From: Ruditapes philippinarum
Lineage: Eukaryota
Length of the DNA stretch: 64,000 nucleotides
Assembly (NCBI RefSeq): GCF_026571515.1
Contig: NW_026864183.1
Coordinates: forward strand, 62,001 to 126,000
Direction of reading: 5' to 3'
Made by a program: the position numbers and the translations under genes. Below the pieces are notes generated by a model. It was not told the DNA's origin, searched no databases, and was given only the letters and a program-made list of their open reading frames with translations. Positions 5,374 through 37,968 of this stretch are shown here, in pieces (positions within the stretch are counted from its first letter, which is position 1; every line of letters begins with the position of its first letter).

Positions 5374-8300
5374 ATGGATTCATGTGACATCCTCGTATAC
5401 TGTTTGTCAGGACTGTTGTTTTGTGCGATAATTGCCTGTCTGGCTATGTATTTATGCACCTATACAAAGTAAGTTTATTTTACCTTTATTTCACACCTTA
5501 TTGAAGATAGCCAATTGACTTTCAGTGTTTGAACTGGGTGAAATTCCAATAGAAATCATTTCGGATCCAATTTTATCAATTTGACCTCGGCTAGCGCCTC
5601 GTCCTATATAGATTTTACACAAATGGGGTGCAACGGTGATATATTGCGATACAGTTCATTTTGCGATACATTGATTACATTATGACAAAAAAGAAAAGAA
5701 AATAACAGAAAACTGAAAGTATCTTATTTAATAAAATGAAATTTTATTGTTAAGAACTCTTAATGTAGTGTTAATCAAACTATTAAACCAGATCACAAGA
5801 CAAAAAATATCTTCTACACAAAGACTGATTGACACTGTTATTTGAACAATTTACGTCATCGGAAGTAATGACTTTTATTTTTTCAGTCATTTGCTGATTT
5901 AAATACTACATGTTGATTCCCTTTTTCTCGAGAAATTGTACCAAAAATAGCCATTTCTATCCTATCAAACTCGTCCACTTTATCCATGTTGTAATAGTAT
6001 ACGGAGTATGTAAACATGAACAATGTGACTTAATTTTTTTACTCATTTTTCATGCGCGGCGACTTTGAAGAAAAATTATTATAAATCAGCATAACAAATG
6101 CATCGGTGAGAAAAATCTCAAGTCGGTACCAACTGTTTTAGATTAAACATAATAAGGCGGCATTTCATACAAGTTTCTTTCGAAATACGTAAATGCTTTG
6201 TTTGGGCAAACAGAAACAAATATTATGGAAAATAATCACACCACGAGGATGTTGTATCGTCATATTGTTTCACCTTTATATTACAGCATAGAATATATAA
6301 ATGTACTCATAATGTATATCATAACGTAATATAATCACGGTATCTTTAACAGGACAAGTGGAGCAAAATTAAGAAAGGAATTATTACGAGTTAGAGAGGA
6401 GAACTCACAACTAGAAGATGAACTTAGAAAGGAGACACAGGAAAAGAATGATGCCTTGAAACGGTAATATCAAATTAGATATAATTAAAATCGGTGTTAA
6501 CGTTTTCTGACTTTTATTGGTAAAATCACATTTTTGTCTTTAATTTTTTTCCTTTTAGATAAAACACTGAACATTTGCACGTCTAGAAACAGAAAATTAA
6601 ATGTCTTTAAAATATCGAAGACTTGAAATGAGGATATATTTTTACAGTCTGAGCGCCATTATGTCAAGTCGTTTGAGGGATGAAAACTTTGATATAGCAG
6701 ATCTGAGCGACGGAAATCGTCCAACCAAAGTGGGAGAACAGTTTTCAGAACTTTATGACAATCAATGGACAGATGCATACGATACAACCAAGAATTTCTT
6801 CGAGAATACTATAACAGAACTTGAAATAATTCAAATACTTCTAGAAATAGTAAAGGTCATCTCATTTACATAATATATTTTGGCAATTTGCAACGTTACT
6901 TTATAAGTCTTCTTTATTTGAAATATAATTACATGTACATATTAAATATATTATTTTTTAAATGTGTTAATTAAAACTGACAAGGTAAATTTGTCAAATC
7001 TATGATAAAAAAAATTAACATTTCCCAGTTCAGAAACTAAAAGATGATTTTGATGCAAAATTGCAAGAAATGTGGATAAATATTGATATGAGGTCTTTCC
7101 AGAATAGTTAACACTGATATTGATTTTAAACCAGTTTTTTTTATAAGATTAGAAAATTCCACTTCAAAGACAATAATGACAATAATATCTAACATGCGTT
7201 TATGCCATTATTATTATGTTTTTACATTTGATTATACAAAAATTATAGTCATTTATCTTAGATGTCTTACATGTATTTTGGAGAAAAAAAAACAGGAAAT
7301 TTTAAATACATGTAAATATTGCATACATCTGCATTTTTGTTATTTACCCTGAGGCCCTCTTATCAGCAGGGGACTAGTATAAATACCAATACACAGCATG
7401 ACTTGAGACTGTCCTCTTGTATAAAAGCATTCCCTTTATACATTAAATTTTTAATATAGAAATCTTAAATAAAGTTATCAATTTTATTTATTTCATGCAC
7501 AGATATATAAACTTATATTTAGCTCCATGATTTCTTTGAAAAATTTTAATTATTTATATCTTTAAAAAGTATGCAAGCATTTCATGGTTGAAAAACATAA
7601 TATCACAGTATATGGATTGTTTTAAAATCAATGAATTAATATTCTCTTTCAATCTTGAACATGAGGAATTGCCTCTTAAGTTATATATTATTTTTACACC
7701 GTTAGGATATCGGATTATTATATGTAATATCCAAGTTGGTGTAAAATTAGTTTTGAGATTCTTGTGTCTGTAATAATAAGTAGACAATAATTTAGATCTC
7801 TGGTAGATTTATTTTGTCTCAGTCAATTTAGTATGTGTCTCAAATACAATACAATACATAAAAACATCATTCATAAAGAAATCATACAAGTAATGTATAT
7901 GTATCTGAAATTATCTATATTATAAAAGATTTCATAATTTTACTCATTTCATTTATAACCAATGAAGATAACATATATAGGTTTATTCTATCTACAAAAA
8001 TAAAATAATATTTCTTCGTTATTATTCTAACAAATTATTTAAAGTGGGGAATGGTATTAATTATATATAAGTTACTCGCAAGGCACATGAGAAGTACCGA
8101 AATGTTTTACATGAGATCATGATTTTTTAAACAACAATATTACTAACTAATTGTAACATAAAATTATAAACTTGATAAAAAATCCTATAATTATAAGGAA
8201 CACCTTATTTGACAATTTTAAATTTGGAAGGTATTTACAAAAAACATATCTAAACACATAAGGATGATTAAAATTAAATTATTTCTTAAACATATTTCTA

Positions 8301-11160
8301 GAATACATTTTTCTATAAATTTCAACTTTAAAAAGTATTACAAATCTTAATGTTGTAAAATTACTAAACTGGTATCATATTTAACTCTTAATATGTAAAA
8401 ATATAACAGTTCACTATTTAAACCTAATATGAAATAAAATTACAAAGTTTACAACAAAGTAAGAAATGAAAAATATAACAAATTTAAACAAACAGAAAAT
8501 AACATACCTGTAATAATAAGTAGACAATAATTTAGATCTCTGGCTGATTTATTTTGTCTCAGTCAATTTAGTATGTGACTGCCAGAGTACTGTCCAAGCT
8601 TATATACAGGAGTCTGATATCTGCCAAATACCTTGATGAATAGTCTCAAGTTTCTACTTTGAATTATTTATTAGATTTATGTCACTTTTACTTGTAATTA
8701 CAACAATGTATCTTTCAGAAGTATAGAAAAAGTGGTTTGAGGCAAACATAACATATATTTCTTACACAATAAATATGTTGACAATTACTGACTTGTCTTT
8801 CACATTAAAGTAATTGATGAATGTATGAACCTGTTGCTAAATATTTTGAGAACAATACAATATTGTTTAGTGTGAACTCAACTGTAATTGGAGATAAAGA
8901 AATACTTTCACAAATACTTATTATGTACGAAAGAACTTTGAAAACACACGCCTGCATTGTATGGATTTTAACAAGAAAATGAGTTATAAAAGGAGCCCAT
9001 CAAATGTATATTTTTCTACTTTATAAAATATTTGCTTGACAATTGCGAAATCATAAAATATTATACCAAGCATATTCACACAAGTCCATGTAAGAACATA
9101 AGGTGTAAATCTATAAGTTACACTTTCGATGAGCAGCACTTTATGGGCGTTGAAAGTTTTGAAGTTTGAATCTTCGGACCGTAGGGTCATCAGATTTTGG
9201 CGTCCTGAAATGATTCTTTCCGCTTTGAGTGGGTGCCCGAGTTGTGTTTGCAGTATGTTGTTTTCGTTGTAGAGATCTTGACACAATGTCATCACCCTCC
9301 GCTTGGTTGTTCTTGGTAGATCGTTGACAACATCAGGAAGCCAATGTACACCAAAACGGTGCCGTGTTGCTTATACACATTGCTTATTCATTAGGCTGTC
9401 CAGCTCCATTATCTAAGTAAATTAATGTATAAGACATTTTTTTCTTTCAAAGATTATATTGGCTCTTTTATAAACATGACCTTTCATATGATGATAATGA
9501 CCAGTTTTTAACAATACAATACATTCCATCTCATTTAATTATAACATTATATTCCATTGCAGAGAAATCATAGCTTACTTATTTGTTGAAATAGATTATT
9601 TAAAACAATGAAAATTAAATGACTTCAGAAGAAAAAAACAAGCATTGTACAAAAACAATGTTACAGTTTTAACAAATAGAAATAAAGAGCACACAAGGCA
9701 TGTAGTTTTGTTATGTTATCAGTAAAAAAACTATTCACTTGGTCAAAAACGTTACTTTCGATGTTTGGATCACCGTTTTTATCATACGATTATTTTATAT
9801 TAACTAAATCAATTTAAAATAGTTTGATGTCTAGGTGACCGCAATACATAGGTTGAAACAGATGTGAAAAGCTACATTGATATTTTGTTCTTAAAACACT
9901 TCATTTCAGAGCCACGAAGTATAATTGCTGTTCTAGGCTGACATGTAATGCCTTGCAGATACTTTACCTCTATCACCAAGGGCTTAATATAAACAATGGC
10001 ATCGAGGTCCAAGTTACTTTTTGTTGCAAAGTTAAGTTTTATTTAGACACAACCAACTTATCAAGGGTAGTGACATAAAGAAAAATATTTAACTGTTACA
10101 TTTCAGGAATGTTTTACAGAATGTAAAGACGTATCAATAAACCAGATGGAAAAGTTAAAGGAGAACGTGGCAAATATTACCGTCATTATTACAAAGGTAT
10201 GCTATAATTTACAAATAAGCTATATTTAAAAAAAAACGAATAATGTCATTTTATTCATTTTTGCTTCAAGTTTGAGTTATAAAACACTTTTTCATAAAAA
10301 ATTCTGGAGATCTTCAGACATAAATAAACAAAAGGTTTTGCAAAAGCTCGTTATCATCAAATATTTTTATACAATAAAGCGTAGAAAAACATGTTATTGT
10401 TCATGTTTAAAGACTATTACAGAAATAGAAAAATTTACATTGTTACATTTTAAATAATAAGCCAATGATGATATGAATATTATTCTAGAGTGACAGTCAA
10501 CTTCCGTTTTATCTGATGCAACGTATTAAAATAGAGAGGAAACAATCCGCCCCGAACCACATTCCAGCAGTGGATATGGTTTGTATATTGTTGTCTTGCA
10601 GACACGTTGCATTTTGATTACACATCATCTTTACGCAGTAAGACATTTTGAACTTATTCCTACTGTACACTTATTAATAATTTAAATTTCTCATGATAAG
10701 TAATATGGCTTTTAGACAACAATGATAGTATTTGTTGCAGGCTTTGATAAAGCGAATGAAGCACATTAAGTTTGTTTTAGACATGATTATTATAATATCG
10801 CATTAACACATGTTTCAGATTCTACCTAGGCTGGAGCGGAACTTCTCATCGAAAAACCAAAACCCAAAATTTCTTCATGAGCCTTCTGTTAAAGCATACG
10901 TACAAGAATGTCTGAAACTTTCGTGGTTCATGGTCATACAAGACCCTCCAATGACAATGGTACTTGAACCTGCATCCAATGATTATAAATACTTTAAGGA
11001 GTACAAGAATCGAGGCAAATTTCTTAGTTATATTGTATGGCCAGCTTTGCTTTTACAAGAAGAAGGTGAATTGATATGTAAAGGTGTTGCAGAGTTCACT
11101 AGCACCTCTTCGTCTCTAAATTCAGAAGTGGAACTAAGAGTATATTTTGGATATAATTGA
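5374..11160 (+). CDS. TM-anchored coiled-coil MIEAP(SPATA18)-C-terminal-domain protein, copy A (~311 aa, 6 coding exons)
   Basis: Exons 5374-5468 (MDSCDILVYCLSGLLFCAIIACLAMYLCTYT), 6353-6463 (coiled coil), 6648-6855 (LSAIMSSRLRD..DLSDGNRPTKVGEQFSELYDNQWTDAY), 10107-10196, 10489-10578, 10819-11160 (YVQECLKLSWFMVIQDPPM..YIVWPALLLQEEGELICKGVAEF). All GT-AG, phases compatible, 936 nt open; last-exon motifs resemble the SPATA18 C-terminus as I recall it (FIQEIC..MQALEPPL..VWPAL..KG). Confidence 0.85.
7768..8577. repeat. 70-bp direct repeat (7768-7837 / 8508-8577) flanking a 670-bp AT-rich insert
   Basis: 'ctgtaataataagtagacaataatttagatctctgg..gatttattttgtctcagtcaatttagtatgtg' occurs twice with 2 mismatches. 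Confidence 0.85.
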
Positions 11161-11897: not shown

Positions 11898-12157
11898 TTA
11901 AGGTCGTTAACTTCAAACCACTTGCCCCTCACCTCTGTGGGTTCGAATCCCGACAGGGACTTTAAATTCTTTCATGTGAGGAAGCTATCCAGCTAGCTTA
12001 CGTAACGTCGGTGGTTCTACTGAGGTACCCGTTCGTGCCGGAAATAATGCATACCAAAAGGGCACCGAGGTCTTCCTCCACCAGTAAAGCTGAAACGTCG
12101 CGATATGACATATACTGTGTCGATGTGATGTAAAACCCAAAACAAACAAACAAAAAC
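11898..12157 (+). mobile_element. tRNA-derived SINE (MetaSINE-like core)
   Basis: B-box GGTTCGAATCC at ~11940, core 'gaggaagctatccagctagcttacg..gtcggtggttctac..gtcttcctccacca', (CAAA)n tail; reverse copies at ~44.0 and ~46.5 kb. Confidence 0.8.
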
Positions 12158-13331: not shown

Positions 13332-14972
13332 TTAATGCAGGCAGCTTTCATGTTGTTGTTCACAAGCATGTTTGTGGTCTTTACTTTTTTTATATTTTTA
13401 TACACTTTTAACTATTTCTACTGCCTCATAATTTACAATGGTTTATTTAGTTTTGTCTTTCTCCACAATATCATCCATAATACTAAATGTAAGTTAAATC
13501 AAAAGACCGCAGTATTCACAAGTTTTTAGATAATCGGGCAGCACATTTTTAATGAGTGTTAAGGGAGAAGACTTTTGACCAATAGTGTCTATTCTGTCAT
13601 CTTCCTTATATGCCCTTGACAGGTCCTTCACTTTTACGAGACATTCATTGCCAGTTGACCATTTCCTTTAAGTGTTAAGACAATTGGTAGCTTATTTGGT
13701 ATCTCCTTAAATGATGCAGCTGTATGTTTTTGCCATATCATCTGGGGGTCGTACACAGACATTGTGGTATTGTCGTGTGGTATTTGCCGGCATGACATAC
13801 ACTGTTCGTAGACGACTTCACGATATGATCACCCAATGGCTGCCAGTTTTGTCCATTTTAGCCTTGTTTAGGTCTGCATAGGCATACTACCCTACATACC
13901 GATCTTTGTCTAATTTTCTATGTCTGTAATATCAACCTTTAAAAGTTTCCTTACAGTAACACAATGATCGGGAATATATTTAATGATGAAAACTGTATGA
14001 CATCATACATACGATCGGAATCGTTTAATTACTGCAATTACTTGGCATGCCCATGAACTTTCAAGAAATACAATCACTTTTCACCTTAAATAGTTTAACT
14101 TTATATTTGTTCCCCTTATCTTGAAGCAGAAGATTAAGAATCACTGTCAGTTGCATGCCACTTGGACCAACAGTATTACTTTCAAAACACAATACGAGCA
14201 GCTGAAACTTTAATACAAGCTATTGAAATTACATATAGCTAGCTTGGAGTTAATAATTATATAAATTTGGCACTGATTAATTCGTCACATAACTTTGACT
14301 CGATAAAAATATGTAATCTTGTAATCGTGGCACATATTCTTGGTGGTCTCCATTTTTGGGCGAGAAAATTGTGGCATTCAATGTTATAATGTATAATAAA
14401 AGTTCAGCTAGCTATCATGAATTTTAAAGTACACTATCAACATAAATAATGATGGACTCTATAGATGAACTATATACCGAGTAATTTATTCATATTGATG
14501 CTTAAAGAATTGCAATTACTTAGAGTAATCTTTTATTAAATGGAATAGTTGCTTTCGCTGGTTTTATAACTGAAACGGACACTTAATTAGATTTAGATCT
14601 ATATAAACCATTACATGTTATTTCAACTTTCATGGTAAGATTGAAATGAATTAAAACTACCTTTATCATTGGAATCGAAAGAGGAATGAATATGGTTATT
14701 TATGATATAACATATATTTGTATCTTAAAAAAACAACAAAAAGCAACAACATGTATTTTCCAAAAAAAATGCCATGACCTAGTTACTATTTTTACCTTTT
14801 TTACAAAGAAAAATGATGGTTTATAATTAACTTAATCCGATTTTTAGAAGTCAAGATATTGTGCTATCTTTAGTAAACACATTTATCTAATCTCATTGGG
14901 CAGATTTGATAAACGTGACTGTAAACATACTGTATTTGTTACATTACGATTTATGCAGTTCCTTTGTGAATT

Positions 14973-17900
14973 ATGGATGTCCGTGATTACATTATTTACT
15001 CAGAGTCAGCTGTGTTGGTTATTGGAATTATTGTAGTGATAATTGAATCCATACGCCAGTGTTTAAGGTACGTATATGAGCCGCGTCACGACAAAACCAA
15101 TAAAATGAGTTTGCGGCCAGCATGGATCAAGACCAGCCTGCGCATCCGCGCAGTCTGACCAGGATCCGTGCTGTTTGCTATCAGTTTCTCTACTTTTTAT
15201 AGGGTCTGTAAGCGAACAGCATGGATCCTTATCAGACTGCGCGGATGCGCAGGCTGGTCTGGATCCATGCTCGTCGCAAACCCACTACGTTGGTTTTGTA
15301 ATGGGGCAGCTCATATTTCTATACTGTTATCCTAAACTCTTATCTCTTTATTTGATGCAACCAAATGCCGTCTGCAGGTTTCGCACTTCAATTTGTCATC
15401 ACTTTCTCAAATGTTCTTGTTTTATAATGTTTTCTTCCTAAAAATGATTTGTAACTGCTTTCGATATAAAAAGCACCATTTTTCACATCAAATAATTATA
15501 AGACTATTATTACATTATCACAGACGTCGCAAGGTGCGCTCTCACGACTTGGAGCGAAACTGTCATGAACGCTGTGCACATATAAATAGGTAAGCATAAC
15601 ACTTATCATGTAATGGTATAATATTGTTTGATTGATAGTCATAGACATGTGCCATGAAAAGTGCTGTTCTTGTGAATCTTTGTATCATATACTAGCTGTT
15701 GCAACCAAACCTGTATTAAGGAAAAATATGGTTTCATGCAGACTATTTTGGGATCTTACAAATGTAACATTTGTGCTTTTTCATCAAATATGTATGACAA
15801 GTGTTTTTTGAATTCAACCTGATTTTCTGTCTGTCAAGTAGCATTTTGTAAATTTGACGTGGATATATTTTGCAATGTAGATGTAAAGGTTACTATACAG
15901 TATAGAAGGTACGATTTATTTTTTAATTTTGAACATGGCATTTCCAAAGCCCTATATTGTTTTATAGATTATTGTTGCAACTATTGGATCATACGCTGCT
16001 GTAAATTATTCTTCATTCCGTTTTAAGGGTAGACAAAATAAATATAAAGCCTGCAAAATTAATTGACAGGCTGGTACCGTAGAGTACATGTATATATATA
16101 TAATTGATCTTATTAGGTTCAATGAAGCTGAATCAGAATGGAAGACGGCGAAGACAATCCTACAAAATAAACTTAAACTAGAGGAAAATGAAAAAAAAGA
16201 TTTTTTAAAACGGTAAACCTTCCTCGCTCTTAAAAATATACAAATGCTTACATTGAATGGGTATTTCCAGCTATTGACTAAGTCTGTTTACTGGCATTAT
16301 AAACAGTATTGTCAAACATCTTTAGTATGTCCTTTTAGAAAACAACCTGTATTGTAAAATATCCATGTTTATTGTACTTCCTCTTTTTTCTGTATGAATA
16401 TGTGAAGTCTTAATTTGACCAAAAACATGGGCAGCGTTTCCTTTTTTATATTAAATTTCAGGAAAGCCTCATTTACATCTTGATATCAACATTATGTCAT
16501 CTAATATTTATTATATTTTTGCATAATTTTTCATAATTTTCATATATTGAAGATATAGAACACTGAATTAAGAAAATATAATTTGATTATTCAATAGATA
16601 TCAAAGAATCAACCAGGTACAAGATGAACTTACAAAGAAAAAAGCTAAGAGGGAATGCGTTATTAAACTACAATCTATTTTCCTTAAAGCTTGAGAAGTT
16701 ACTTGTATTTCATTTATTCAATTATATAATTAGATTGAAATGACGAATAAATACCATAGTCAAGTTATCTTTATTAGGTTTAAAAATGCTGAAGAAGAAT
16801 GGAAAAGACAGATGTTAGGCCTGCACAATGAGCTTACAAAGGAAAAAGAAATTAAAGATGATGCATTGAAAATGTAATTATTATTTTTTGCTTTTAACTA
16901 TTGGTTTATAATGACACCTCTTTCCCAATATTTTAATCTATTGAACTCTTTACCTACGAAAGGAATAAGCGTAATGTAAGATGAGAATATTGAATGTTGA
17001 ATATTATGATTTATTTCAAGATTAACATTTTTTCGTCGGGATTGGAAAATACAATGGTAATTTACTGTTAATGTTGAAAATATTTAGACAGAAAGCAATT
17101 TGTTTCAATAAAATATTCATGAAACAACAGTACTTTATTCCTTTAAGTTTGAGAAATTATATTAACTTATATTTTATTTTATTCAATGATGTATTTAAAA
17201 TGAAACAATGAGCAATTATCATAGTCAAGTTATCCTTGTTAGGTTCAAAGATGCTGAAACAGAATGGAATAGACAGGTGTTAAGCCTACATGATGAACTT
17301 ACAAAGGAGAAAAAAGTTAAAGAAAATGCATTGAAAAGGTCTTCTTAATTTAATATTGAACTTGTCCTGTGTTATACTTGGAGATTTTCCATCATCTATG
17401 TAAGGGATTCATATATCAAACTGTGTAATAACAGCCAACATAATCATGCTTACTGATATAAGTAGTTTACTAAACTAAAGTTGAAATCACGAGGCAAATG
17501 TCTCGTCTTTGAAGAAAGACTTTTGTGCTTTAAACTATTGGTTTTTAATGACGTCCCTTTCCCATTTTTCAAATCTATTGAACTCTTTACCTACGAAAGG
17601 AATAAGCGTAAGGTATGATGAAAATGTTTACGCTATTTACACATGTGATTTATTTAAATAATGATTTTTTTCATCGGGATTGGAAATTACAATGGCATTT
17701 TAATAATAATGTTAATTTTTTTTAGAAAGAAAGTATTTGTTTCAAGAAAATGTTTACAATAACAATCGCTTATTCAATTTTTTTTTCAAAATATGTAAGT
17801 ACAATGATGAAATATAATCGTCATCAATATGATCTAATTAGGATCACTGAAACAGAAGCTGAATGGAGGAATAAGGTGTCAATCCTGCAAGATGAACTTA

Positions 17901-20005
17901 GAAAGGAGGCACTAGAAAAGGACGATGCGTTGAAACGGTAAAATTCATTTTGAAAAAATAACAGCTAAATTGTTGAATAATATTTATATCGATTTGTGAC
18001 TTTTGTCACGTTTAACTTTTCAAGCATTTGTCAAATTACTATATTGTAAATAATTTCAAATTATTTAAGTACATTTTAACATCCTAAGTGTCAAAATGTA
18101 AGTACATTTTTAACAGCCTAAGTGCCATAATGGCGAATCGTTTGAAGGACGGCAACCCTAATGTAGTAGATCTGAGCGACCAAAATCGTCCAGGAAAATT
18201 GGGAGAACAGTTTACTGAACTTTACGACAATCAATGGACGGATGCCTACGGTGCTATAGATGATTTCTTTGGGAAAGCTAAAAGTGAGCCAGAAATTATT
18301 AAGATTCTTGTTGAAATTTTTGAGGTAATTATATGTACTTTCTATTTGATTACTTATTCGTTTTTAATATGTCTAATGTTTTTAGATGTACAATTTCCTA
18401 ATTTATAATAAAATGCACGTTACTCAGTTGCCATCTCTTTACAAAGGAGGTTAGTCTATTAAGTTGAACATGTTTACGCAATGCTTAAATTGATATCATA
18501 CAGTCTGCATCTCCTTTAAAAATAACAGTTATAAAGCCCTCGTCGTCGACAGACCCGACTAGGACAATATTTAAATGTGTCAAAAATATATAACATACCT
18601 TAAGTATCACACATAGGAACATTTGAAAGGAAATGCTACATAACACTGGAATATTTCAGAAATGTTTTACGGAATGCAAAGCTCTATCTGGAAACCAGAT
18701 GGATCAGCTGAATGACAACGTGTCTTGTATTGCTTCTATTATCACAAAGGTACGAGCTATTGAAATTTAAGCTAGTTTTATGCTTTGTTCAGTCCCCGAA
18801 AACTTTAGTATAAACTGAATAAGTGAGTCCAAATTTCGATTACCTTCATATTAAAATATTAAAATGCCAACAGTAATGTCGCCAATATTTATAATACAAT
18901 TGTTTGGTAGTAATCGACAGCTCGTGGACATACGACAACAAAAACAAGAGAAATAAACAAAAATAATCATAATGATAATCTTTCATTTTTTCTTTTGGCA
19001 CATTTTAGTTACCAATCTCGGAACTTTCTGACGGTATTAATAAAAAATCAAAGGTATTTAAGTACAAATATGCGTCAAACGAAAAAGAATAGAAATGGAG
19101 CTCAATCTTCTATAGAATTCTGACATTATCTACTTCTTCGATTTTTTTATTAGATAATGCTGTTATCTAAAATGCTGAGTTAGGTTGGAAGGGAGGGAAG
19201 ACGTAAACCATTCATTCTTCTAACCCAAAATACAAAATGACCGAAGATGAACTTTGTAACATTATCACTAAATATAAAATTTAACATAATGAACTCGGGT
19301 ATTACAACTATTATTCCAGAAAGACAACAATCTTCCAACCGATCTAATGCAGCGCATAAAAGAAGAAAGGAAAGCGTTTGCCGTTGACGAGGTTCCAGAT
19401 TTAACAGTGGTAAGTAAAATTTATATATCTCTATAATCATAGTCGAGTAACATTTATCTTGGTCAGTGACATATATCTTTAAATCTTAAGATTATCAGAG
19501 TAAATTTTAATGAAATACCTCTAGCATTTAACGAGACATGCACTCTCATTGATATCATAAACTAAATTTTATGCCGACGGCAATCCTTAGTAAGATAGCC
19601 CCTACTTTCCTTTAAAAAGTTGAGCTACATATTACATTATTCAAAGATATGTTAGCGTTTTTTACCCCTTTTGCACATAAACAGCAGGTTTAAAAATTAT
19701 TGGTGTTCCAGATTCTGCCTACTCTCAAAACGAGTTTCTCATCGAAAAACCAAGAAGTTGGATTGCTTGATGAACAGCATCTTATTGTGTATATCAAAGA
19801 ATGCCTGAAGCTTTCGTGGTTAATGGTTATACAAGACCCACCAATGGCTATAGTACTTAAACCTGAAACCGATACATATGAAAACTTTAAAGCATACAAG
19901 ACTAGAGGCAAATTTTTAAAATATATAGTATGGCCAGCGTTGCTTCTGATGGAAGGAGGTCCATTGGTAACGAAAGGTGTTGCGGAATTTACTTCAGAAA
20001 CATGA
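14973..20005 (+). CDS. TM-anchored coiled-coil MIEAP-domain protein, copy B (~408 aa if all 10 exons are used)
   Basis: Exons 14973-15067 (TM), 15524-15589, four 96-nt coiled-coil exons 16117-16212, 16778-16873, 17243-17338, 17842-17937, then 18117-18324, 18660-18749, 19320-19409, 19712-20005; the TM exon and head exons (95/208/90/90 nt) match copy A in size; 1227 nt open. Confidence 0.85.
15074..15316. mobile_element. Palindromic MITE (~240 bp)
   Basis: Arms atatgagccg..aaaaccaa..cagcatggatcaagaccagcctgcgcatccgcgcagtctga are the reverse complement of tcagactgcgcggatgcgcaggctggtctggatccatgct..ttggtttt..gctcatat; decayed relatives at ~42.8, ~45.85 and ~53.2 kb. Confidence 0.85.
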
Positions 20006-25100: not shown

Positions 25101-25984
25101 TACTACAGTTTATGTTTCCACATTACTTATCTTTATGGAATATCCATTTAAATGCCCATCAACATAACGGCACGAGATGACATGTGACATGTCCGTGATC
25201 TTAGAGTTTTTGTAAAAAAAAGTATAATATATGTATAGGTATTGCCGACTGCTCTATAAAATCATTGATTGGTATGTCTATGGATTTGTTTATTATCTGT
25301 TTTTTTGTGGGCAATGACGGTTATGCGTGGCTTAATAATGTGTTTTTGACATATAGTTAGAATATGGTAGAATAAAATGTTCTCTCACTTAAACTTTTGA
25401 AGGTGTATTCAAATTTGGGCCGATTTGACTTTAAATGGGCCGTTTTAACATGAAGTAAATTTGTCCAGAGGTGGATTTGACCGTAATCCTATGGACGATA
25501 TGAAGTTTCGTATAGGCTATCCGAAGCGTTTAATGAGATATGCTTGTCCTATGCAAATCTTCAACTGTCCATGACAGTGCTGATAAGGATGTCCAAGAAT
25601 GCTTTGCAAAGTTGAACCAAATACCACATCACTTCAAAATATTATAACGTCTCTTTATACCTACACACAGTAAAAGCATGTTTCAAATGATATTTCAGGT
25701 CAGATTTCGCCTTCATTGAAGAGGTCTTTCTTATCGAAAACCAGGATCAAAGATTTTCTCGTTATGTGTATACAAAGGAATGTCTGAAACTACCGTGGTT
25801 TATGGGGATACAAGAACAACCAAATGAAATAGTACTTGAACCTAAAGCCGATTCTTATGACAATGTTTAGGCATACAAGACAAAAAAGCAAATCATTTGA
25901 GTATATTGTATGGCCAGTGATGTTTCTAGTGGAAGTAGGTCCATTGATAATGGAGATGTTGAAGAGATTGATTCAGAAACATGA
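22113..25984 (+). pseudogene. MIEAP-domain paralogue copy C: truncated or pseudogenised (TM + coiled coil intact to a stop at 24356-24358)
   Basis: Exons 22113-22207 (METIDCIIYTLSAVLSIEIIALAFVFISIRTG), 22904-22999 (96 nt), 23983-24374 (63-bp repeats, TAA at 24356, 4 nt short of frame). No 208/90/90-nt exons found. Frameshifted last-exon relic at ~25704-25984 (KECLKLPWFMGIQEQP; FEYIVWPVMFLVEVGPLI). Confidence 0.8.
24046..24374 (+). repeat. Coding 63-bp (21-aa, three-heptad) tandem repeat, ~5 units
   Basis: DALRQTASLQEELQREISKKE / NALRLITRLQEIIRRENLEKE / NALRQRAYLKEELTIENIAKE / NALRQNARLQEELKQERLEKE / DALLQIARLQEKNRGENV*. Confidence 0.9.
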
Positions 25985-30748: not shown

Positions 30749-33700
30749 ATGGATCATTGTGCTGGACCCATTTACCTTGAATCAGTATGGTTGATGGCAT
30801 TCATTTTTGTATCAATCATTGCAATATGTACGTTGAAGAGGTGAGTGTTCTTATGTATCGCATAGTATTTTTAATGTCCGAGAAGCTCTTTAAATAAATG
30901 ATTGTGAAATTCATTGTACTCATTTTCCCACTGTACGAGGGGTGTTCAAATATGTATGCAACTAGGCCAATATCTTGCTTTTAACCAGGCTTTACATGTA
31001 TCGTATGGATGGTTGTATAAGCTCTCAATTTATACAATACATAAGTAAGTCAGCTCAGTAGCTTTGACAATAGCTCGATTAACGCTATCTACTCGTGTAT
31101 ACTAAAGCTAAAATGGTTGGGAAAAGGTCTCATTTCACTGACCAAATATGGTCCTACATCAAGATACGCTGTATTCTTGGTATACATGCGAAATATATAT
31201 TTAACAATAAACTTTCTTTTTCCATCTGTCACACGGTGGTGTAAAAAAATTAAAAGTAGTGTGAATTCAGTAAAATATACACCTCATGCACGCCGTTCGA
31301 AAACTGCAACTTCGCCAAAAATGGTTGAACATGTAAAGGATTTGATTGCTACTGATGCAAGATTTACAACTAGCTATATAGCCAAATGCATTGGTATCTA
31401 CCGTAGGAGCCGCTCATAAATTCTCAAACGTCATTTAAATATGTGAAGGATAAATGCCAGATGGATACCCCTAACAAAAACGCAAAAACTTGCTCGGGTA
31501 AGAACCTCCAAACAATTGTTGAAACAGTTCCCTAAATACAACAATCGATCTTTCGCAAATATCATCACTGGCGATGAGACGTGGATTCACTTTTATGAGC
31601 CCAAGCGAAAGATACATAACACAATATGGGCAACCAATTGAAGTAAGAGACCTTGACAAGCAAAACACACCATTAACTTTACCAAATTGCAGTACCAAAG
31701 GGTAAATCTGAAAATGGCAAGTTTTACAAAGTCAAGGTCCTTCATAAATTAAAGAAATATTTCAAAAGCCGTCGACCAGCAACTGGTCACCATGGTGTCA
31801 GGTTGTTGCATGACAATGCTTCGTCACACAAAGCGGCCATTAAGCGGCCATTGTAAGAGAAATTCTGAATCAGAAAAAGGTTGTCGAGCTTCGTTACCCT
31901 CCTAATTCGCCAGATCTTTTCCCTTTGTGACTTTTTCCTATTTCCGAGGCTCAAAAACACCTTGCTGGAAGAAAATATCAAACGCAAAAAAATCTCGGTT
32001 CGGCTATTTTCCAGTGTCTGAAAAATATACCTCGACATGATTATGAAAACGCATTTAAAAACTGGATAAAAAGACTTAAACTTTGTATATCACATTGTGG
32101 TGAGCATTTTAAATGATTGAGATAATTTATTTTGGCTCTTTGTTAAGCACTTCTGAAAATTGAACAGTTGCATTGATATTTGAACACCCTTCGTATATTT
32201 TAATTTTTGTTTAATTGTAAGTTAAACAGATAAAGTATTTTTTCAGCCTCAGATGCTACACGCTAGTTTTCAAAAAATGGTTAAAGTTAAGCAGTAGACC
32301 ACAGTGTTTATTACCGGTGATATCGAGCACATCAGAAGAGTACGAGGAATTGCGCAGTCCGGCATGTTGTGATGCAAGAGAGAGGTAAGCTTACATTGAT
32401 GATAAAAATTTTGATAGTTTCTTCGGTACGCAATCTGCTTTGATCATATTGTATGTTTACATCAATATTAGGATTGTATCAGTAGTACATGTATAAGAAA
32501 TAAGTATATTTTTATGTACGGAATATTATGTGTATGGACAAAAAATATGTAAATGATGTTTTTTTCACTTCATAAACTCTTTTTATTAAAAAGTTTCAAA
32601 AAAAAAATCTATTTGTGATACTAGTATGTGATAAGATTGTGATATGTGATTAGTGATTACATGCCTAAAAAATTAATCCGAATATAAACTGGCATCACTA
32701 TCGAATTAACTTTAGACTCCATGAAGATAACATAAAATGGATGAGTGAGATGTCAAGCCTACAAGATGAATTAAGGAAGAAGGACGATGCCTTGAAACAG
32801 TAATTAATTACACTTTTACCCCGCTAGTATCCCGCTTAAGTTATGTAGTGGAAATTGATTGTTTTACATAATTGACATTAGAATTTTGATATCAAACATC
32901 TTTATTCAAATAACTTGTAGTTTAGAATTTTGTCATACCGGGCAGATGGATATGCGACCGGTGTATGCTAGCCTAAAGGTAAGTCATTATATCATTGTTA
33001 TTCCATAGAGAGTTGAGCCCGGAACATTTATGCTGATGCTTCAACACTCATGATATATTCATCGGTCGATTGTATCTTTTTTGTATTGATTGCAGGTTTA
33101 AATTTATATGCATGTTACAATCACTATTTGTTCAATGACCCGTTACAAAATGTTTAAATACCGACGAAATTCTAAAAATAAAATGGCTTAAATAAGATAA
33201 ATTAAACAAACAAAAATGCAGCCGTAAGATCAAGGATTTGGACGGTTCCAGAGATGTTATATTTCTAATACTTAAAGATCGTTCAGCACCACAATATTGT
33301 TTTGTTTGTGGTATTTTGATTTTAACTATTTGGTATTTTCTTGTTGGGTGGCTACAATATTAATTCCTACTTGAATAATGTTTAATCATCCTTAAGATAT
33401 GTTGCCTGCTTTTTAATTTTGTCTATTGATGTCTTATCTATGATATGCAGGTTTTATTACCTTTTACCCCTTTTTCAAAATTTCGCGTTTAAGCCACACG
33501 TATTCTTAGAAAATACTTGGGGACTATATGCAACTTTTCATGGAATGACACAAATAATAGTGTCACATTGAAGATATCATTATTACCGCCATATAAACGC
33601 GGATGTTTCTAAAACCAAAATAGTAATATGTTCATGTTTATATGTTGAATTCTGCTTAAGCTTGTGCTAGGTTGTGTGGACGGAAGCTTGTAGATACCAC

Positions 33701-33865
33701 TATCGTTCCTGACCAGGCTCGATCAAATTGAGTCTGTAACATTTCCATTTTGCCGTTTATCTTTATTTGTAATATACATGCACCTGCATATATCGTCAAA
33801 CATATTTTACTGGCACAAGAGGCCTGAAGGTTATTTGTTACAGTTAATAAGTGCAGTAACTTTCA

Positions 33866-33897
<32 letters not shown>

Positions 33898-36800
33898 AAT
33901 TGATTGATTGTTTGAAAAGATTGATTGATTGATTGATTGATTGAAGAAAATGACTTAATATTATACTCAAATTAATTTTATGAGGTTCAAGGAAGCTGAA
34001 GCAGACTGGAAGAGAAATATGTCACGTTTACAAGATGAACTTACAAATGAACAACAACAGAAGGAGGATGCCTTAAAACGGTAAAGCCCTGTTTCGAACT
34101 TGGTATGTCCATTCACAGATGAGGAATTTAACATACAAATTCACTTTCATGTCTCGGTTATGGCCACTTTCGTTTTAAACACTGTCATAAAACATTTATA
34201 AAGGTTTAAACGACTCAGATTATAATATGAACAGTACATTCTGAGAAGCAAGTCTTATATTGGAAATATACTATGGATTGTCAATTTCTACATAAGTAAG
34301 GCGGTTGGTTGAAATGTATCAAGGGAACGTGTTAATGAGTTCAACTGACGCCTGATTTTCTCATCTGGCAACATTACTCATAAGTTCCAGGAAGCGGATT
34401 GGGAGTTGCTTTTAATACGACTGAGCTTGAATGAATATGTTCTAAGTAATTTGTACATGAATTTCAACTGTTTTTCATTTTACAAAGACTAGATAGATAT
34501 ATGGTTACAAGAAGGATGAATGTTTCCGGACAATTTGCAGTAGATTAATTTCTAAATTGATTAAATAGAAATGTCATTGTTTTTCCAGACTAAGTGCGAT
34601 AATGTCGAGCCGTTTAAGGGACGGTAATCCTAACGTAGCAGATCTTAACGATCAAAATCGTCCAACCAAAGTGGGGGAACAGTTTTCAGAACTTTACGAC
34701 AATCAATGGACAGATGCTTATGGTGCTATCAACATTTTTTTCGGGAATTCTTTAGCAGAGAGTCAGATAATCCAGATTCTTCTAGAAATTTTAGAGGTTG
34801 TTTTATACTTTTTACCAACGTGTCTTTTAATCCTTTTAGATTATTCTTATTATCAAGATGGTTTTAAGTCTCTCAAACATTGTTAAGTCATGTAGCGACA
34901 ATTCATGGTTTTTTGGTCGAGGAACATCTCAAATGTCAATAATGCGTTATTTCCTGGAGAAGAGGACACCTAGGAATAACAACTGGCCTGTGGCAATACT
35001 TAAATGGAAGAATCCAAAGTCCCTGTTGAGATTCAAACCTATAGTTATTTCTTAAATCAATGATTGATATCATATGAAATTTGTTTGACTATTGTCAAGA
35101 ATGTCTACATGTATATAATCCAGTGTAAACATACCAATTATATAATAACATAAAATCTGACCCAATAAATAATATGAAAAGGCGCAAAATCGTCTTTACT
35201 GCATAATTACATTAATTAGTGTTATCATGGACTCAACGACTTAGAACTAAAGGAAAATACGTTAAATAAATGTAAAATAAAACTGATATAAACTTGGACA
35301 TTTCAGCATTGTTATACAGAATGTAAAATCATATCAGAAGACCAGATGCACCAACTCAATAACAACGTGGCAAGTATTGCGGATGTTATTACAAGGGTAA
35401 GTACTGTTAAATAGTCGCAAAAAATCCTACTGTTGTCTATATTAAATGATTTATTTCCAATACAAATGAAATATTTAAGGATTAGTGCAATATTGAATTG
35501 AATTGAGATTTTAAATTCTGTTCTTAAAAATAGTTGTTTTTTCAGCTGTCATGTGTATTTCTTCTGTAGTTAAACTTTGGTTTCAAGATTGATTGACCAA
35601 AACCATGAAAATAATTCCAACATAATTCATAATTCATTCACGTCTTTCTACGTGACTGTGAACTGTCATAAAAAATGTTTCAATATTATCCTATCAATAC
35701 CTAAACACTGTATCGACAAAGGGAGGCACGTGACCTGTATAGGGGGACTGCACAGTGTTTATGAACATATTTAATCTTGCTACAAATTTCTTATTTAACA
35801 TATATGGTGTTATACTGACAAATAATGTTATGTATTAACTCCTATTACAGAACAGACAATACAAATTGATAATTATTAAACTCTTACTTTAAAAATGAAA
35901 GATAGTACATTTTTACACATCACAGTAATTGCTTGTCAGTTAAGGCTAAAATAAAACAATTTTGTTACTTTATTCAAGAGATTATAGTGTAAAAATACAA
36001 CAAATTCTGTCAATACCCACTTCAAAATAGACTGGTAGTCCTGTAAAATCTAAATATAAACAATTAAATATGATTACTTTTAAACAATAGAGAAAAAAAG
36101 AAACCCCAAAGAAAGCCCAACACGACAAAATTGAAATTGTTGCAGGCTCGGTTTGATTGAACTGAACAAGTGCAAACTACCGTCCTCGCCCCCTCGCAAC
36201 GGCTTCAGCAGGAACTGGTACAATTTTGAATTTAAAAACATCCGCAGATGTGTTCATATGGTGATTATCATGGAACCTTCAACACATAAGTGCCATTCCA
36301 CGAAAAGCGGCATATGGTCCCCAAATAAAATATATGTGTGCCCTGAACTAAAAAACAATGGGCGGAACTAAATAAAATGAAATTTTGAAAGGGGATCAGA
36401 GGTTATGAAGCCTGCATATCACAGATAAGACGTCAAAAAACAAATTTAAAAACAGACCACATATCCAAAGGGGGTTTCAACATTATTAAAGTGAGGAAAA
36501 CTGGAACCACCCAACAAAAAAATAAGACCATTTATTTTTGGAAAGAATCAGGTGATCATCGCCAATACCAAGTTATTAACATTATTAAATTTGTTCAGGG
36601 CATTTCCTAATAACAGATTTTAATGACTACAAAGTAGACAGAAAACTTGCAGCATCTGCAATATCTATCTATTTGCCTGGACAACATTATCTAAGGGGAA
36701 AGCCATATACAAGGTGCCATCATAAAGGTGATAACACTCATCATCTGGGAGAGAGGAAAGAGTGCATGCCAGGAATCAATTGGACTACAGTAGGACTCAT

Positions 36801-37968
36801 TCTGTTTTAGCAATAACATTTCTTAGCTTTAACTCCATAATAATTCTAAAATTGTACATTAAGTTTTTAGATTAGGCTTTCAAATAATAATTGTTCTTTC
36901 TTTTCATCTGTCCTAGAACTGCTTGTACTCACATATTAAAATAAATGTCAACATCAAAATTTTGTTGAACAAATGTTTTACTTACACTTATGAAATTGAA
37001 CACTTTCATTAATTAATCAATAAATATTTAGCCCCCAGATTTAAAATTTCATTATATTCAATCTCTACCAAAATGTTTAAAACATGGACCATTTTCATTT
37101 TTCTCTTACTTATTTCTTGACAAGATATTTTCTTTAAAAATTTGACTCATGAATTTAGAAAGCAAAATTTGAAGGTATGTACAGATCTTTAAGAGTATGG
37201 CCAACTTACCTCCTAGAGTCACGTGGTTTGTCGATACAGTGTATAGAAACCTTTGGAAAGTTTTACATGCTAACCCTAAATTATCATAAAACATTAAGTT
37301 AAGGCTATTAAATTCAGAAAACAAATATATGATTGAAATTCATAATACTATTTCAGAAACACAACAGACTTCGGACTGATCTGATGCAACGCATAAAAGA
37401 AGAAAGGAAAATGTTTGCTCTCGATCAGGTTCCAGTATTAGAATCGGTCTGTATTAATGACATCTATCTAATGAAAATGGTTGTCTTTACTGCTGTGTTT
37501 AATGCTAATGATATACAGACATTTTGGTTCAAAGTTTTAATAATATAAAAAAGCATAACTTTTAAAGTCTGTTACATTGTTTGAATAATTATAGTGATCA
37601 ATTGAGATTCAATATATTGTGTATTCATGACAATAAAAAAGAAACAAAGTTTAAATATCATTTCAGATCCTACGCAGTCTTAAGAGTAAATTTTCTTCGA
37701 AATACCAGGACCAGAGATTTCAAGATGATCCGATTATTATAACGTTTGTACAGGAGTGTTTGAAGCTATCGTGGCTGATGGTTACACAAGACCCACCCAT
37801 GGCAATTATTCTAAAAAAACCCGAAGCGAGTTTTAATAATTTAAGCCATAAACAAAACTTTGAGGAAGTGTTTTAAGCTAATTTTTTGGCCCGGGGGCTG
37901 CTTTTTAAAAGGGCGGAGGGGGATTAATTAACGAAGGGGGGCCCGAGGTTTTTAATTTTAAAAAAATG
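30749..37968 (+). CDS. TM-anchored coiled-coil MIEAP-domain protein, copy D (end of last exon garbled)
   Basis: Exons 30749-30840 (MDHCAGPIYLESVWLMAFIFVSIIAICTLK), 32247-32384, 32716-32799, 33985-34080, 34589-34796, 35307-35396, 37357-37446, 37667-~37968 (FVQECLKLSWLMVTQDPPMA, then homopolymer-rich, stop-laden sequence still alignable to VWPALL..KG). Confidence 0.75.
30936..32193 (+). mobile_element. Full-length decayed mariner transposon (1258 bp, TA TSD) in intron 1 of copy D
   Basis: TA|CGAGGGGTGTTCAAATATGTATGCAACT ... AGTTGCATTGATATTTGAACACCCTTCG|TA; fragmented transposase motifs ARWIP, IITGDETWIHFYEP, LLHDNASSH, PPNSPDL..CDFFLFPRLK with stops and frameshifts. Confidence 0.92.
33867..33943. 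repeat. (GATT)n microsatellite
   Basis: Two adjacent GATT runs just upstream of a copy-D exon. Confidence 0.95.

What the first reader, a model, noticed from the sequence alone, without database searches (positions are those of the whole stretch)
5374..37968. Tandem array of membrane-anchored MIEAP-domain genes with a modular, variable-length stalk
Seen: four head-to-tail paralogues share one plan, a 92-95-nt TM exon, a variable set of phase-2/phase-2 linker or coiled-coil exons, and a fixed 208/90/90/last-exon head. Known: vertebrate SPATA18/MIEAP is a single-copy mitochondrial quality-control protein with no N-terminal TM helix that I know of. Inference: this is a lineage-expanded, membrane-tethered MIEAP-like family under birth-and-death evolution, with divergent anchors and stalks but a conserved head. 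That pattern is typical of innate-immune or stress effectors. It is the best candidate in the window for an undescribed system.
Basis: partly seen in the sequence, partly recalled or inferred. Interest (0 to 1): 0.85.

Follow-up and report, generated by a model that had tools for sequence, protein, structure and literature searches.

The report
Membrane-anchored MIEAP gene array in clam
This stretch of Manila clam DNA holds a row of related genes, two intact, one doubtful and one dead, whose proteins pair a membrane anchor and a variable-length coiled-coil stalk with the 'mitochondria-eating protein' (MIEAP) domain. The family's expansion in bivalves is already published, but I found no description of this anchored form, and its function is unknown.

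Summary
The window (Ruditapes philippinarum, contig C12670) holds four head-to-tail MIEAP-domain (PF16026) genes, and a fifth lies just upstream.

- **Shared plan:** each gene starts with a 92-95-nt exon encoding a transmembrane helix. Next come phase-2/phase-2 linker or coiled-coil exons whose lengths are multiples of three. A 208/90/90/last-exon head follows.
- **Genes A and B:** both are intact and equal the RefSeq 'uncharacterized proteins' LOC132724768 and LOC132724769. Public RNA contigs show eight of gene B's nine splice junctions. A 1378-nt transcript contig encodes the whole 408-aa protein, anchor to head.
- **Gene C:** it lacks the 208/90/90 exons and carries stops and frameshifts, so it is a pseudogene.
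- **Gene D:** its last exon is broken as assembled.

The 'lineage-expanded MIEAP family' reading is correct but already published (Regan 2021). What I did not find in the literature I could search:
- a Venerida clade of signal-anchored MIEAP proteins, predicted N-out/C-in;
- a model-supported parallel dimeric stalk;
- fast-changing anchors on a conserved head that has no clear solved fold.

An immune-effector role is unsupported. Two other notes of this scan describe MIEAP arrays elsewhere in this genome.

The parts
5374..5468 (+). Gene A (LOC132724768) exon 1: start codon, short acidic N-terminus and transmembrane helix; 95 nt, phase-2 donor
   Evidence: identical to residues 1-32 of P0001
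6353..6463 (+). Gene A exon 2: coiled-coil stalk, 111 nt, phase 2/2
   Evidence: heptad a/d contacts 38-77 in the dimer model
6648..6855 (+). Gene A exon 3: 208-nt first head exon (conserved loop and first head helix)
10107..10196 (+). Gene A exon 4: 90-nt head exon
10489..10578 (+). Gene A exon 5: 90-nt head exon
10819..11160 (+). Gene A last exon: C-terminal half of the MIEAP domain, stop TGA
   Evidence: PF16026 47.9 bits on this exon alone
14973..15067 (+). Gene B (LOC132724769) exon 1: transmembrane anchor, 95 nt
   Evidence: an RNA-run contig ends exactly at 15067 (table 8)
15524..15589 (+). Gene B exon 2: basic, Cys/His-rich linker, 66 nt
   Evidence: junction to the next exon seen in RNA contigs
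16117..17937 (+). Gene B exons 3-6: four tandemly duplicated 96-nt coiled-coil cassette exons (16117-16212, 16778-16873, 17243-17338, 17842-17937)
   Evidence: all three cassette-to-cassette GT..AG junctions and the junction to the head seen in RNA contigs
18117..18324 (+). Gene B 208-nt head exon
18660..18749 (+). Gene B 90-nt head exon
19320..19409 (+). Gene B 90-nt head exon
19712..20005 (+). Gene B last exon, stop TGA
   Evidence: PF16026 45.5 bits
22113..22207 (+). Copy C exon 1: transmembrane anchor, 95 nt, intact
22904..22999 (+). Copy C 96-nt coiled-coil cassette exon, intact
23983..24374 (+). Copy C long coiled-coil exon made of 21-aa (63-nt) tandem units; 392 nt (not a multiple of 3), in-phase TAA at 24356-24358
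25699..25970 (+). Copy C remnant of the last exon: TAG at 25868-25870, 1-nt insertion after it, conserved QDPP motif lost; no 208/90/90 exons upstream
30749..30840 (+). Copy D exon 1: transmembrane anchor, 92 nt
32716..32799 (+). Copy D coiled-coil exon, 84 nt
33985..34080 (+). Copy D coiled-coil cassette exon, 96 nt
34589..34796 (+). Copy D 208-nt head exon, open
35307..35396 (+). Copy D 90-nt head exon, open
37357..37446 (+). Copy D 90-nt head exon, open
37667..37969 (+). Copy D last exon: open for 69 codons (PF16026 34.4 bits), then TAA 37874-37876, TAA 37925-37927 and indels in a homopolymer-rich stretch; family stop position TGA 37967-37969

Best explanation
This is a tandem array of a clam-specific (order Venerida) subfamily of the bivalve-expanded MIEAP-domain family. 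It has five genes, four of them in the window.

Each intact gene encodes a single-pass membrane protein with these parts, in order:
- a 5-13-residue acidic N-terminus;
- a transmembrane helix encoded by the first exon;
- a juxtamembrane stretch rich in Cys and basic residues;
- an alpha-helical stalk;
- a C-terminal MIEAP head, modelled as a helical bundle plus a small beta-sheet.

Shown here:
- the exon plan;
- Pfam membership;
- transcription and splicing of gene B, including a full-length anchor-to-head transcript contig;
- that the anchored proteins form one clade;
- decay of copy C and damage to copy D;
- faster amino-acid change in the anchor than in the head.

Inferred:
- The charge bias (negative N-flank, positive C-flank) predicts the N-terminus outside or in a lumen. 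Stalk and head would then sit in the cytosol.
- The stalk forms a parallel, in-register coiled-coil dimer that continues into a head-to-head contact.
- Because the stalk is built from symmetric phase-2 exons that duplicate freely, the head's distance from the membrane differs between paralogues. A stalk of about 38 residues in A would span roughly 6 nm as a helix, and about 150 residues in B roughly 20 nm.

My working model: these are membrane-tethered, dimeric versions of a Mieap-type scaffold. They present a conserved ligand-binding head at paralogue-specific heights above an intracellular membrane face. The anchor and linker are free, or driven, to diversify, and copies are gained and lost. 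The ligand and the target membrane are unknown. By analogy with human Mieap, an anionic phospholipid is the first candidate.
For: - **Exon anatomy:** all borders are AG/GT and the frames are open. The spliced A and B products equal RefSeq proteins P0001 and P0154.
- **Family membership:** PF16026 scores 75.3 and 70.8 bits over profile positions 1-193. All 86 aligned relatives match PF16026.
- **RNA:** eight GT..AG junctions of gene B are seen in contigs of three runs. They run linker > cassette 1 > 2 > 3 > 4 > 208 > 90 > 90 > last. An exon-1 contig ends exactly at the donor, 15067.
- **Full transcript:** P0250, a 408-aa protein 97% identical to gene B's, sits on a 1378-nt contig. Since 408 codons are 1224 nt and the gene spans about 5 kb, that contig can only be spliced mRNA.
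- **Topology:** the N-flank charge is -4 to 0 and the C-flank +1 to +5 in all 10 clade members and in copies C and D. Most have a juxtamembrane Cys.
- **Structure:** the AF2 model has pLDDT 91.2, with one continuous helix over residues 5-81, a helical bundle over 94-237 and a beta-sheet over 244-292. The head-only model has pLDDT 92.7 and pTM 0.89.
- **Dimer:** ESMFold2 gives ipSAE 0.39 against a best control of 0.02. This mark was reached by 21 of 30 solved homodimers and 0 of 23 solved monomers. The three runs agree in at least 90% of contacts and the partner pLDDT is at least 78. Same-residue contacts at 42, 45, 49, 52, 56, 59, 63 and 66 indicate a parallel, in-register pairing.
- **Clade:** the 10 anchored proteins from Ruditapes, Mercenaria, Mactra and one unnamed transcript assembly form one branch, SH-aLRT 99.
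- **Evolution:** in the recent U/A pair dS is about 0.1 in every exon, but dN is 0.28 in the TM exon against 0.04-0.10 in the head exons. That is 12 of 31 residues changed against 29 of 226 (Fisher p 9e-4). Between two gene B alleles, 8 of 13 differences fall in residues 1-54 (p 4e-5). Head omega in the older pairs is mostly 0.07-0.45; two pairs over the 30-codon 90a exon (U-D 0.90, A-D 1.25) are higher.
Against: - The exon 1 > exon 2 junction of gene B was not among the junction rows the reads tool listed; 164 rows were not shown. It rests on the 1378-nt contig, the RefSeq model and the contig that ends at the donor.
- Transcription of A, C and D was not tested; the single read-laying run went to gene B.
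- Topology, dimerisation and structure are predictions. The complex tool warns that eukaryotic passes may come from memory.
- No exon skipping was seen, so 'tunable' stalk length is shown between paralogues only, not by splicing.
- The anchor's mean hydrophobicity (2.2-3.2) does not point to a particular membrane.
- Faster anchor change may be relaxed constraint rather than selection, because the omega of 3.6 rests on only 1.5 synonymous differences.
- No functional data exist for any bivalve MIEAP protein.
Confidence: 0.75

Rival explanations
1. Mitochondrial outer-membrane version of Mieap. The N-terminal helix is a signal anchor for the outer mitochondrial membrane. The cytosolic head binds cardiolipin or phosphatidic acid exposed on damaged mitochondria, as part of organelle quality control in an animal that faces daily hypoxia.
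For: Human Mieap acts at mitochondria, and its structured, hydrophobic C-terminal half is proposed to bind cardiolipin-type lipids (PMC10845071). A short N-terminus, a single helix and a positive C-flank are the layout of signal-anchored outer-membrane proteins (established knowledge). Regan 2021 links the expansion to intracellular damage control.
Against: The anchors are strongly hydrophobic (mean KD 2.2-3.2), and from my own knowledge that usually favours the ER route. Juxtamembrane Cys, and the MG-start lipid-anchor motifs in sister clades, suggest plasma or endomembrane targeting instead. No localisation data exist. Lipid binding by the head is untested.
Confidence: 0.2
2. One reading: a diversifying innate-immune or stress effector family, with anchors and stalks evolving in an arms race.
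For: The family is large and lineage-specific. The array shows birth and death and holds a pseudogene. Amino-acid change is concentrated in the anchor and linker, both between paralogues and between alleles.
Against: No immune-type domain was found in 86 members. The head, which would be the recognition part, is the conserved part. The predicted topology is cytosolic. The searchable literature holds no induction data for these genes. Transmembrane segments tolerate many substitutions, so fast change there needs no arms race.
Confidence: 0.12
3. The MIEAP head is a very divergent GrpE-like dimer, a nucleotide-exchange or docking factor for Hsp70-type ATPases such as the expanded HSPA12 family. 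Here it would be tethered to a membrane.
For: With the head-only model, the best three of 48,161 PDB representatives are GrpEL1 and two bacterial GrpE chains (Z 6.5, 6.3 and 6.2, with 103-116 aligned residues spanning the whole model). GrpE also tops the weak Foldseek lists. The dimer model has the same order as GrpE: paired long helices, then a helix-helix contact between the two heads, then a beta-domain. HSP70 and MIEAP are both greatly expanded in bivalves. Note s1-792527 of this scan proposes the same idea at another locus, but that is not independent evidence.
Against: Z values of 6.2-6.5 are below the tool's own noise mark (a typical best Z is 7-8 for models with no true match). No Foldseek hit reached E <= 0.001. 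None of 86 members matched Pfam GrpE. hhalign of the family profile against the clam's own GrpE exon gave probability 0.07%. There is no HSP70 match on this contig, and no contig is shared between the listed MIEAP and HSP70 hits.
Confidence: 0.1
4. Gene-model artefact: the TM exons are chance ORFs or belong to other transcripts, and the true proteins are soluble.
For: A Mercenaria relative has an isoform without the anchor (P0158 against P0007). The exon 1 > 2 junction of gene B was not in the listed junction rows.
Against: The 1378-nt contig encodes the anchor through to the head. Transcript-size contigs from other runs encode anchored relatives, such as P0010 on 1309-1646 nt. All five copies keep a homologous first exon with the same phase. 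Anchored proteins form one clade across three genera.
Confidence: 0.03

Closest known systems
Vertebrate Mieap / SPATA18 (Pfam PF16026)
   Same: The C-terminal MIEAP domain matches end to end. A coiled-coil region precedes the domain, as in human Mieap, which has two coiled coils N-terminal to a structured hydrophobic C-terminal half (PMC10845071).
   Different: As far as I know the human gene is single-copy and has no transmembrane segment; it has long disordered regions and forms condensates at mitochondria. The clam proteins are short (311-408 aa), start with a signal-anchor helix, have a compact helical stalk and occur in tandem arrays. About 23 strongly conserved residues lie N-terminal to the Pfam domain border.
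Bivalve MIEAP expansion (orthogroup OG24 of Regan et al. 2021, PMC8382680)
   Same: It is the same family and the same phenomenon: tens of copies per bivalve genome. This genome has at least 143 exon-level matches, mostly in contig clusters.
   Different: The passages I read in that paper (a term search) report counts and duplication timing. They say nothing of architecture, membrane anchors, exon structure or the Venerida anchored clade.
N-myristoylated / palmitoylated MIEAP paralogues of bivalves
   Same: The head is the same and there is a coiled-coil region. An N-terminal membrane-attachment signal is likely: 34 of 190 family members begin with MG, many with MGxxxS/T or Cys pairs. The sister group of the anchored clade is rich in these.
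   Different: A lipid anchor rather than a transmembrane helix. The lipidation motifs were read by eye and not tested.
GrpE / GrpEL1 nucleotide-exchange factors
   Same: The overall order of elements is alike: a long paired helix, a helical bundle that contributes to the dimer, then a small C-terminal beta-domain. It is the top-ranked, though weak, structural match.
   Different: No sequence or profile similarity. Z is below the noise mark. This is resemblance only, not membership.

Membership tests
MIEAP (Pfam PF16026 / SPATA18 family) | Profile match above the curated gathering score over the whole domain | tested here: met
   P0001 (gene A) 75.3 bits and P0154 (gene B) 70.8 bits, profile 1-193 of 195, cut-off 27. 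The last exons alone score 47.9 and 45.5 bits. D's last exon scores 34.4 bits over profile 108-163. C's last exon gave no Pfam hit, though nhmmer finds it at 3e-39.
MIEAP (Pfam PF16026 / SPATA18 family) | Coiled-coil region N-terminal to the domain | tested here: met
   A continuous helix spans residues 5-81 at pLDDT above 90. The dimer model shows heptad-spaced same-residue contacts, score 0.39 against a best control of 0.02.
MIEAP (Pfam PF16026 / SPATA18 family) | Soluble protein without a transmembrane segment (the canonical vertebrate form) | tested here: not met
   All five copies begin with a hydrophobic 19-mer of mean KD 2.2-2.6. This marks an architectural variant; the domain itself is still a member.
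MIEAP (Pfam PF16026 / SPATA18 family) | Mitochondrial localisation, cardiolipin binding, p53 inducibility | not testable with these tools
   These are known for human Mieap only (PMC10845071).
Signal-anchored (type III, N-out/C-in) single-pass membrane proteins | One N-terminal hydrophobic helix, no cleavable signal peptide, net negative N-flank and net positive C-flank | tested here: met
   The N-flank charge is -4 to 0 and the C-flank +1 to +5 in 12 of 12 clade sequences. This is a sequence rule only; the topology has not been measured.
GrpE (Pfam PF01025) | Sequence or profile similarity to GrpE | tested here: not met
   0 of 86 members match PF01025 at E <= 10. hhalign against the clam GrpE exon gives probability 0.07%.
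GrpE (Pfam PF01025) | Shared fold | tested here: inconclusive
   GrpE chains take the top three places in pdb_via_wide (Z 6.5, 6.3, 6.2; rmsd 3.5-5.1 over 103-116 residues). That is below the tool's noise mark. The Foldseek E-value is about 1.

The most novel reading that the evidence does not exclude
The MIEAP head is a cryptic GrpE-like dimeric docking or exchange module for the equally expanded atypical Hsp70s (HSPA12) of bivalves. The anchored subfamily found here would place that module at defined heights on the cytosolic face of membranes. Together they would form a membrane-tethered chaperone-cofactor system whose reach is set by duplicating stalk exons.
Probability: 0.1. Interest if true: 0.8.

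Novelty: new variant of a known kind. Interest (0 to 1): 0.45.

Why it matters
MIEAP is one of the largest bivalve-specific gene expansions, and its biochemical role is unknown even in humans, where the mechanism is debated.

This work adds three things:
- One clade is hard-wired to a membrane by a signal anchor, and other clades carry lipid-anchor motifs. This suggests the family works at the cytosolic faces of membranes, which narrows where to look.
- The clean modular gene plan, with one exon for the anchor, symmetric exons for the stalk and fixed exons for the head, makes these genes convenient for domain-swap and length-series experiments.
- The confident head model has no clear solved relative, and the one weak resemblance (GrpE) gives a concrete biochemical test.

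If none of this leads to a function, the locus remains an ordinary example of birth-and-death evolution in a known expanded family.

Tried and rejected
- **nhmmer:** the first run, given a raw alignment, returned nothing. It was repeated with a built HMM.
- **Structure searches:**
  - Foldseek against the PDB, with the full model and with the head-only model, gave no match at E <= 0.001.
  - The BFVD viral library gave none.
  - VIA-align on the full model returned only long-helix matches, Z <= 7.4, covering residues 1-83.
  - The PDB sequence search returned only coiled-coil noise, with best E 0.011.
- **GrpE homology:** no Pfam GrpE hit in 86 members, and hhalign probability 0.07%. I ran no further search on building a GrpE profile.
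- **HSP70 linkage:** there is no HSP70 match on contig C12670, and no contig is shared between the two hit lists; both lists are lower bounds. Long ORFs in the contig flanks are P450, a KDEL receptor and a reverse transcriptase.
- **A second copy of D's last exon:** I searched this assembly for an allelic contig and found none.
- **Literature:** I found nothing on anchored MIEAP, or on clam MIEAP expression.
- **ESM Atlas:** the only hit was an unnamed Mucoromycota cluster at 0.90, which I did not follow.
- **Exon skipping in gene B:** none appears among the listed junctions.
- **Joined spliced models:** A and B were searched through the database's own proteins P0001 and P0154. Exons were joined only inside local scripts, to read frames and flank charges.


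Full report
**What is there.** The window is G000:C12670:62001-126000 of a 1.41-Gb assembly. Exact protein matches to RefSeq records identify the species as the Manila clam, Ruditapes philippinarum. A self-comparison of all + strand open segments shows repeated exon sets at about 5.4-11.2 kb, 15.0-20.0 kb, 22.1-26.0 kb and 30.7-38.0 kb, with E-values down to 1e-45. Profile HMMs built from the exons find exactly three copies each of the 208-nt and the two 90-nt exons, and four copies of the last exon. A scan for ATG-started, GT-ended, hydrophobic first exons recovers the four claimed anchor exons: 5374-5468, 14973-15067, 22113-22207 and 30749-30840. The anchor exon ends in phase 2. All stalk exons are multiples of three (66, 84, 96 or 111 nt). 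The 208-nt exon restores phase 0, and the two 90-nt exons and the last exon are phase 0.

**Identity.** The last exons of A and B alone match Pfam MIEAP (PF16026) at 47.9 and 45.5 bits, against a cut-off of 27. A search of 1.8 billion representative proteins with A's last exon returned P0001, 311 aa and 99% identical. P0001 is XP_060565714.1, 'uncharacterized protein LOC132724768', and it maps exon for exon onto gene A. P0154 (XP_060565715.1, LOC132724769, 408 aa) is gene B, including the linker exon and all four cassettes. The full proteins match PF16026 over profile positions 1-193 of 195, at 75.3 and 70.8 bits. A fifth gene (LOC132724767, P0153, 82% identical to A) lies at C12670:57323-61559, just upstream of the window, with the same six-exon plan.

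**Are the anchor exons really spliced to the head?** I laid contigs of three RNA-type runs and raw reads of a fourth on gene B. Eight GT..AG junctions were listed: linker > cassette 1 > 2 > 3 > 4 > 208 > 90 > 90 > last, each at the predicted base. The exon 1 > linker junction was not among the rows shown; 164 rows were not listed. One contig does cover 14900-15067 and ends exactly at the donor. Stronger evidence comes from the protein collection. It holds P0250, a 408-aa protein 97% identical to gene B's product, on a 1378-nt contig assembled from a public run. The gene spans about 5 kb, so that contig must be spliced mRNA running from the anchor to the stop. Anchored relatives from other runs also sit on transcript-size contigs, such as P0010, 363 aa on 1309-1646 nt. 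The second refutation test therefore also fails to refute, at least for gene B. Transcription of A, C and D was not tested.

**Which copies are alive.** A and B are intact.
- **Copy C:** it keeps an intact anchor exon and one 96-nt cassette. Its long exon of 21-aa repeats is 392 nt, with an in-phase TAA at 24356-24358. It has no trace of the 208/90/90 exons. Its last exon carries TAG at 25868-25870 and a 1-nt insertion, and has lost the conserved QDPP motif. C is a pseudogene, or at best encodes a headless anchor-plus-stalk product.
- **Copy D:** it is open through six exons and 69 codons of the last exon. It then meets TAA at 37874-37876 inside a stretch where bases look smeared into homopolymer runs, while the family's terminal stop stays in register. 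This could be poor sequence or real decay. No second copy of the stretch exists in the assembly, and no RefSeq protein for D turned up in the homologue search.

**Family context.** This genome has at least 143 exon-level PF16026 matches, many clustered on single contigs. That count is a lower bound, since only 150 of 202 candidates were scored. The bivalve expansion is published: Regan et al. 2021 report 53.1 genes per bivalve against 0.6 elsewhere for their largest Mieap orthogroup (PMC8382680). Gerdol et al. 2017 found the domain over-represented among gill-enriched transcripts of a mussel (PMC5549309). I found nothing on a transmembrane form. Among 190 full-length relatives in hand, 17 have an N-terminal hydrophobic helix and 34 begin with MG, often in myristoylation-like or Cys-rich contexts. 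A head-only tree places the 10 anchored proteins of Ruditapes, Mercenaria, Mactra and one unnamed transcript assembly in one branch (SH-aLRT 99). An MG-rich group lies next to it in the same, otherwise unresolved, 23-row group. Other anchors arose separately at least twice. The Mercenaria members carry neighbouring LOC numbers on one chromosome, so the array is probably older than the two genera; that is an inference.

**Protein anatomy.**
- **Fold:** AlphaFold2 with an 80-sequence alignment gives pLDDT 91.2. The model has one unbroken helix from residue 5 to 81 (anchor plus stalk), a conserved loop, a helical bundle (94-237) and a small beta-sheet (244-292). A natural head-only relative gives pLDDT 92.7 and pTM 0.89.
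- **Topology:** in all 12 clade sequences the flank before the helix carries charge -4 to 0 and the 15 residues after it +1 to +5. Most have a Cys at the cytosolic end of the helix. By the positive-inside rule the head is cytosolic.
- **Dimer:** a two-copy model of residues 30-311 passes the tool's mark: ipSAE 0.39 against a best control of 0.02. That mark was reached by 21 of 30 solved homodimers and 0 of 23 solved monomers. The runs agree in at least 90% of contacts, and the partner pLDDT is at least 78. Same-residue contacts fall at heptad spacing from 38 to 77, with a second contact through head helices 151-192. The model supports a parallel dimer but does not show one.

**Evolution.** In the young U/A pair dS is about 0.1 in every exon. 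dN is 0.28 in the anchor exon against 0.04-0.10 in the head exons. That is 12 of 31 residues changed against 29 of 226, p 9e-4. Between the reference allele of gene B and the transcript contig, 8 of 13 differences lie in the first 54 residues, p 4e-5. Heads of older pairs show omega mostly 0.07-0.45, which indicates purifying selection; two pairs over the 30-codon 90a exon reach 0.90 and 1.25. 'Divergent anchors, conserved head' therefore holds. Whether the cause is selection or relaxed constraint is open.

**What the head resembles.** No solved structure matches by sequence or by Foldseek, and no viral model matches. In the exhaustive aligner the three best of 48,161 chains are GrpEL1 and two bacterial GrpE chains (Z 6.5, 6.3, 6.2), spanning the whole head. 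That is below the tool's stated noise level. There is no Pfam or profile support either, and no HSP70 gene is linked to this array. After seeing my own result I found that another note of this scan (s1-792527) proposes the same GrpE reading at a different locus. I keep it as a low-probability lead.

**Verdict.** The exon-level observation is real for A, B and most of D, and wrong for C. The family assignment is right, and the expansion is already known. The immune-effector idea is unsupported. What seems new is the architecture: a monophyletic, signal-anchored, probably dimeric MIEAP subfamily. Its stalk length is set by duplicating symmetric exons, and its anchor and linker evolve fast. Function remains inferred.

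Noticed in passing
window 15074-15421 (intron 1 of gene B); partial copy 45836-45922: A repeat with summed depth of about 1e5 in contigs of RNA-type runs and thousands of raw reads on both strands. It is probably a very abundant transcribed SINE- or MITE-like element of the clam.
   Followed up: no
window 16708-16991 and 17173-17628: The cassette-exon duplication in gene B copied flanking intron sequence too: 16708-16886 resembles 17173-17351 (79%) and 16884-16991 resembles 17521-17628 (87%). The duplicated unit was therefore a genomic segment of about 465-640 bp, not a retro-copy.
   Followed up: partly
window 24032-24361: Five to six tandem 63-nt (21-residue) units lie inside copy C's long stalk exon. 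This is a second way of lengthening the stalk, by repeat expansion within an exon.
   Followed up: partly
window 25699: Copy C's last-exon acceptor is shifted by one base. A phase-2 stalk donor would therefore splice in frame directly onto the last exon. This suggests C once made an anchor-stalk-half-head product before it acquired its stops.
   Followed up: no
window 45813-46115 (minus strand): An exon of a TEX47-family gene (PF24787, E 4.6e-11). Another note of the scan reports a U12 intron there.
   Followed up: no
window 60078-61256 (+): A single-exon 392-aa ORF with ankyrin repeats and a G-patch domain, GPANK1-like.
   Followed up: no
family-wide (proteins): 34 of 190 full-length MIEAP-domain proteins start with MG, many as MGxxxS/T or with Cys pairs, and some have Cys-rich N-termini. 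Lipid anchoring seems to recur in the family.
   Followed up: partly
P0007 versus P0158 (Mercenaria LOC123563272 isoforms X1 and X2): Isoform X2 lacks the anchor and starts with a different N-terminus. Anchored and soluble forms may therefore come from one gene through alternative first exons.
   Followed up: no
P0001 residues 70-93: A nearly invariant motif block (N82, D87, L88, D90, N92, R93, P94) lies just N-terminal to the Pfam domain border. It is modelled as a loop between stalk and head, so the conserved unit is larger than PF16026.
   Followed up: no
ESM Atlas hit for P0001 residues 70-311: An unnamed cluster of 98 Mucoromycota proteins scores 0.90 by language-model features once PF16026 clusters are excluded. 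This could be a distant fungal relative of a domain said to be absent from fungi.
   Followed up: no
L001:2211-2618, L008:1891-2241, L012:741-2249 (contig flanks): The array's wider neighbours are a KDEL-receptor exon, a cytochrome P450 exon and a reverse-transcriptase ORF. No further MIEAP copy and no HSP70 lie on the 142-kb contig.
   Followed up: partly
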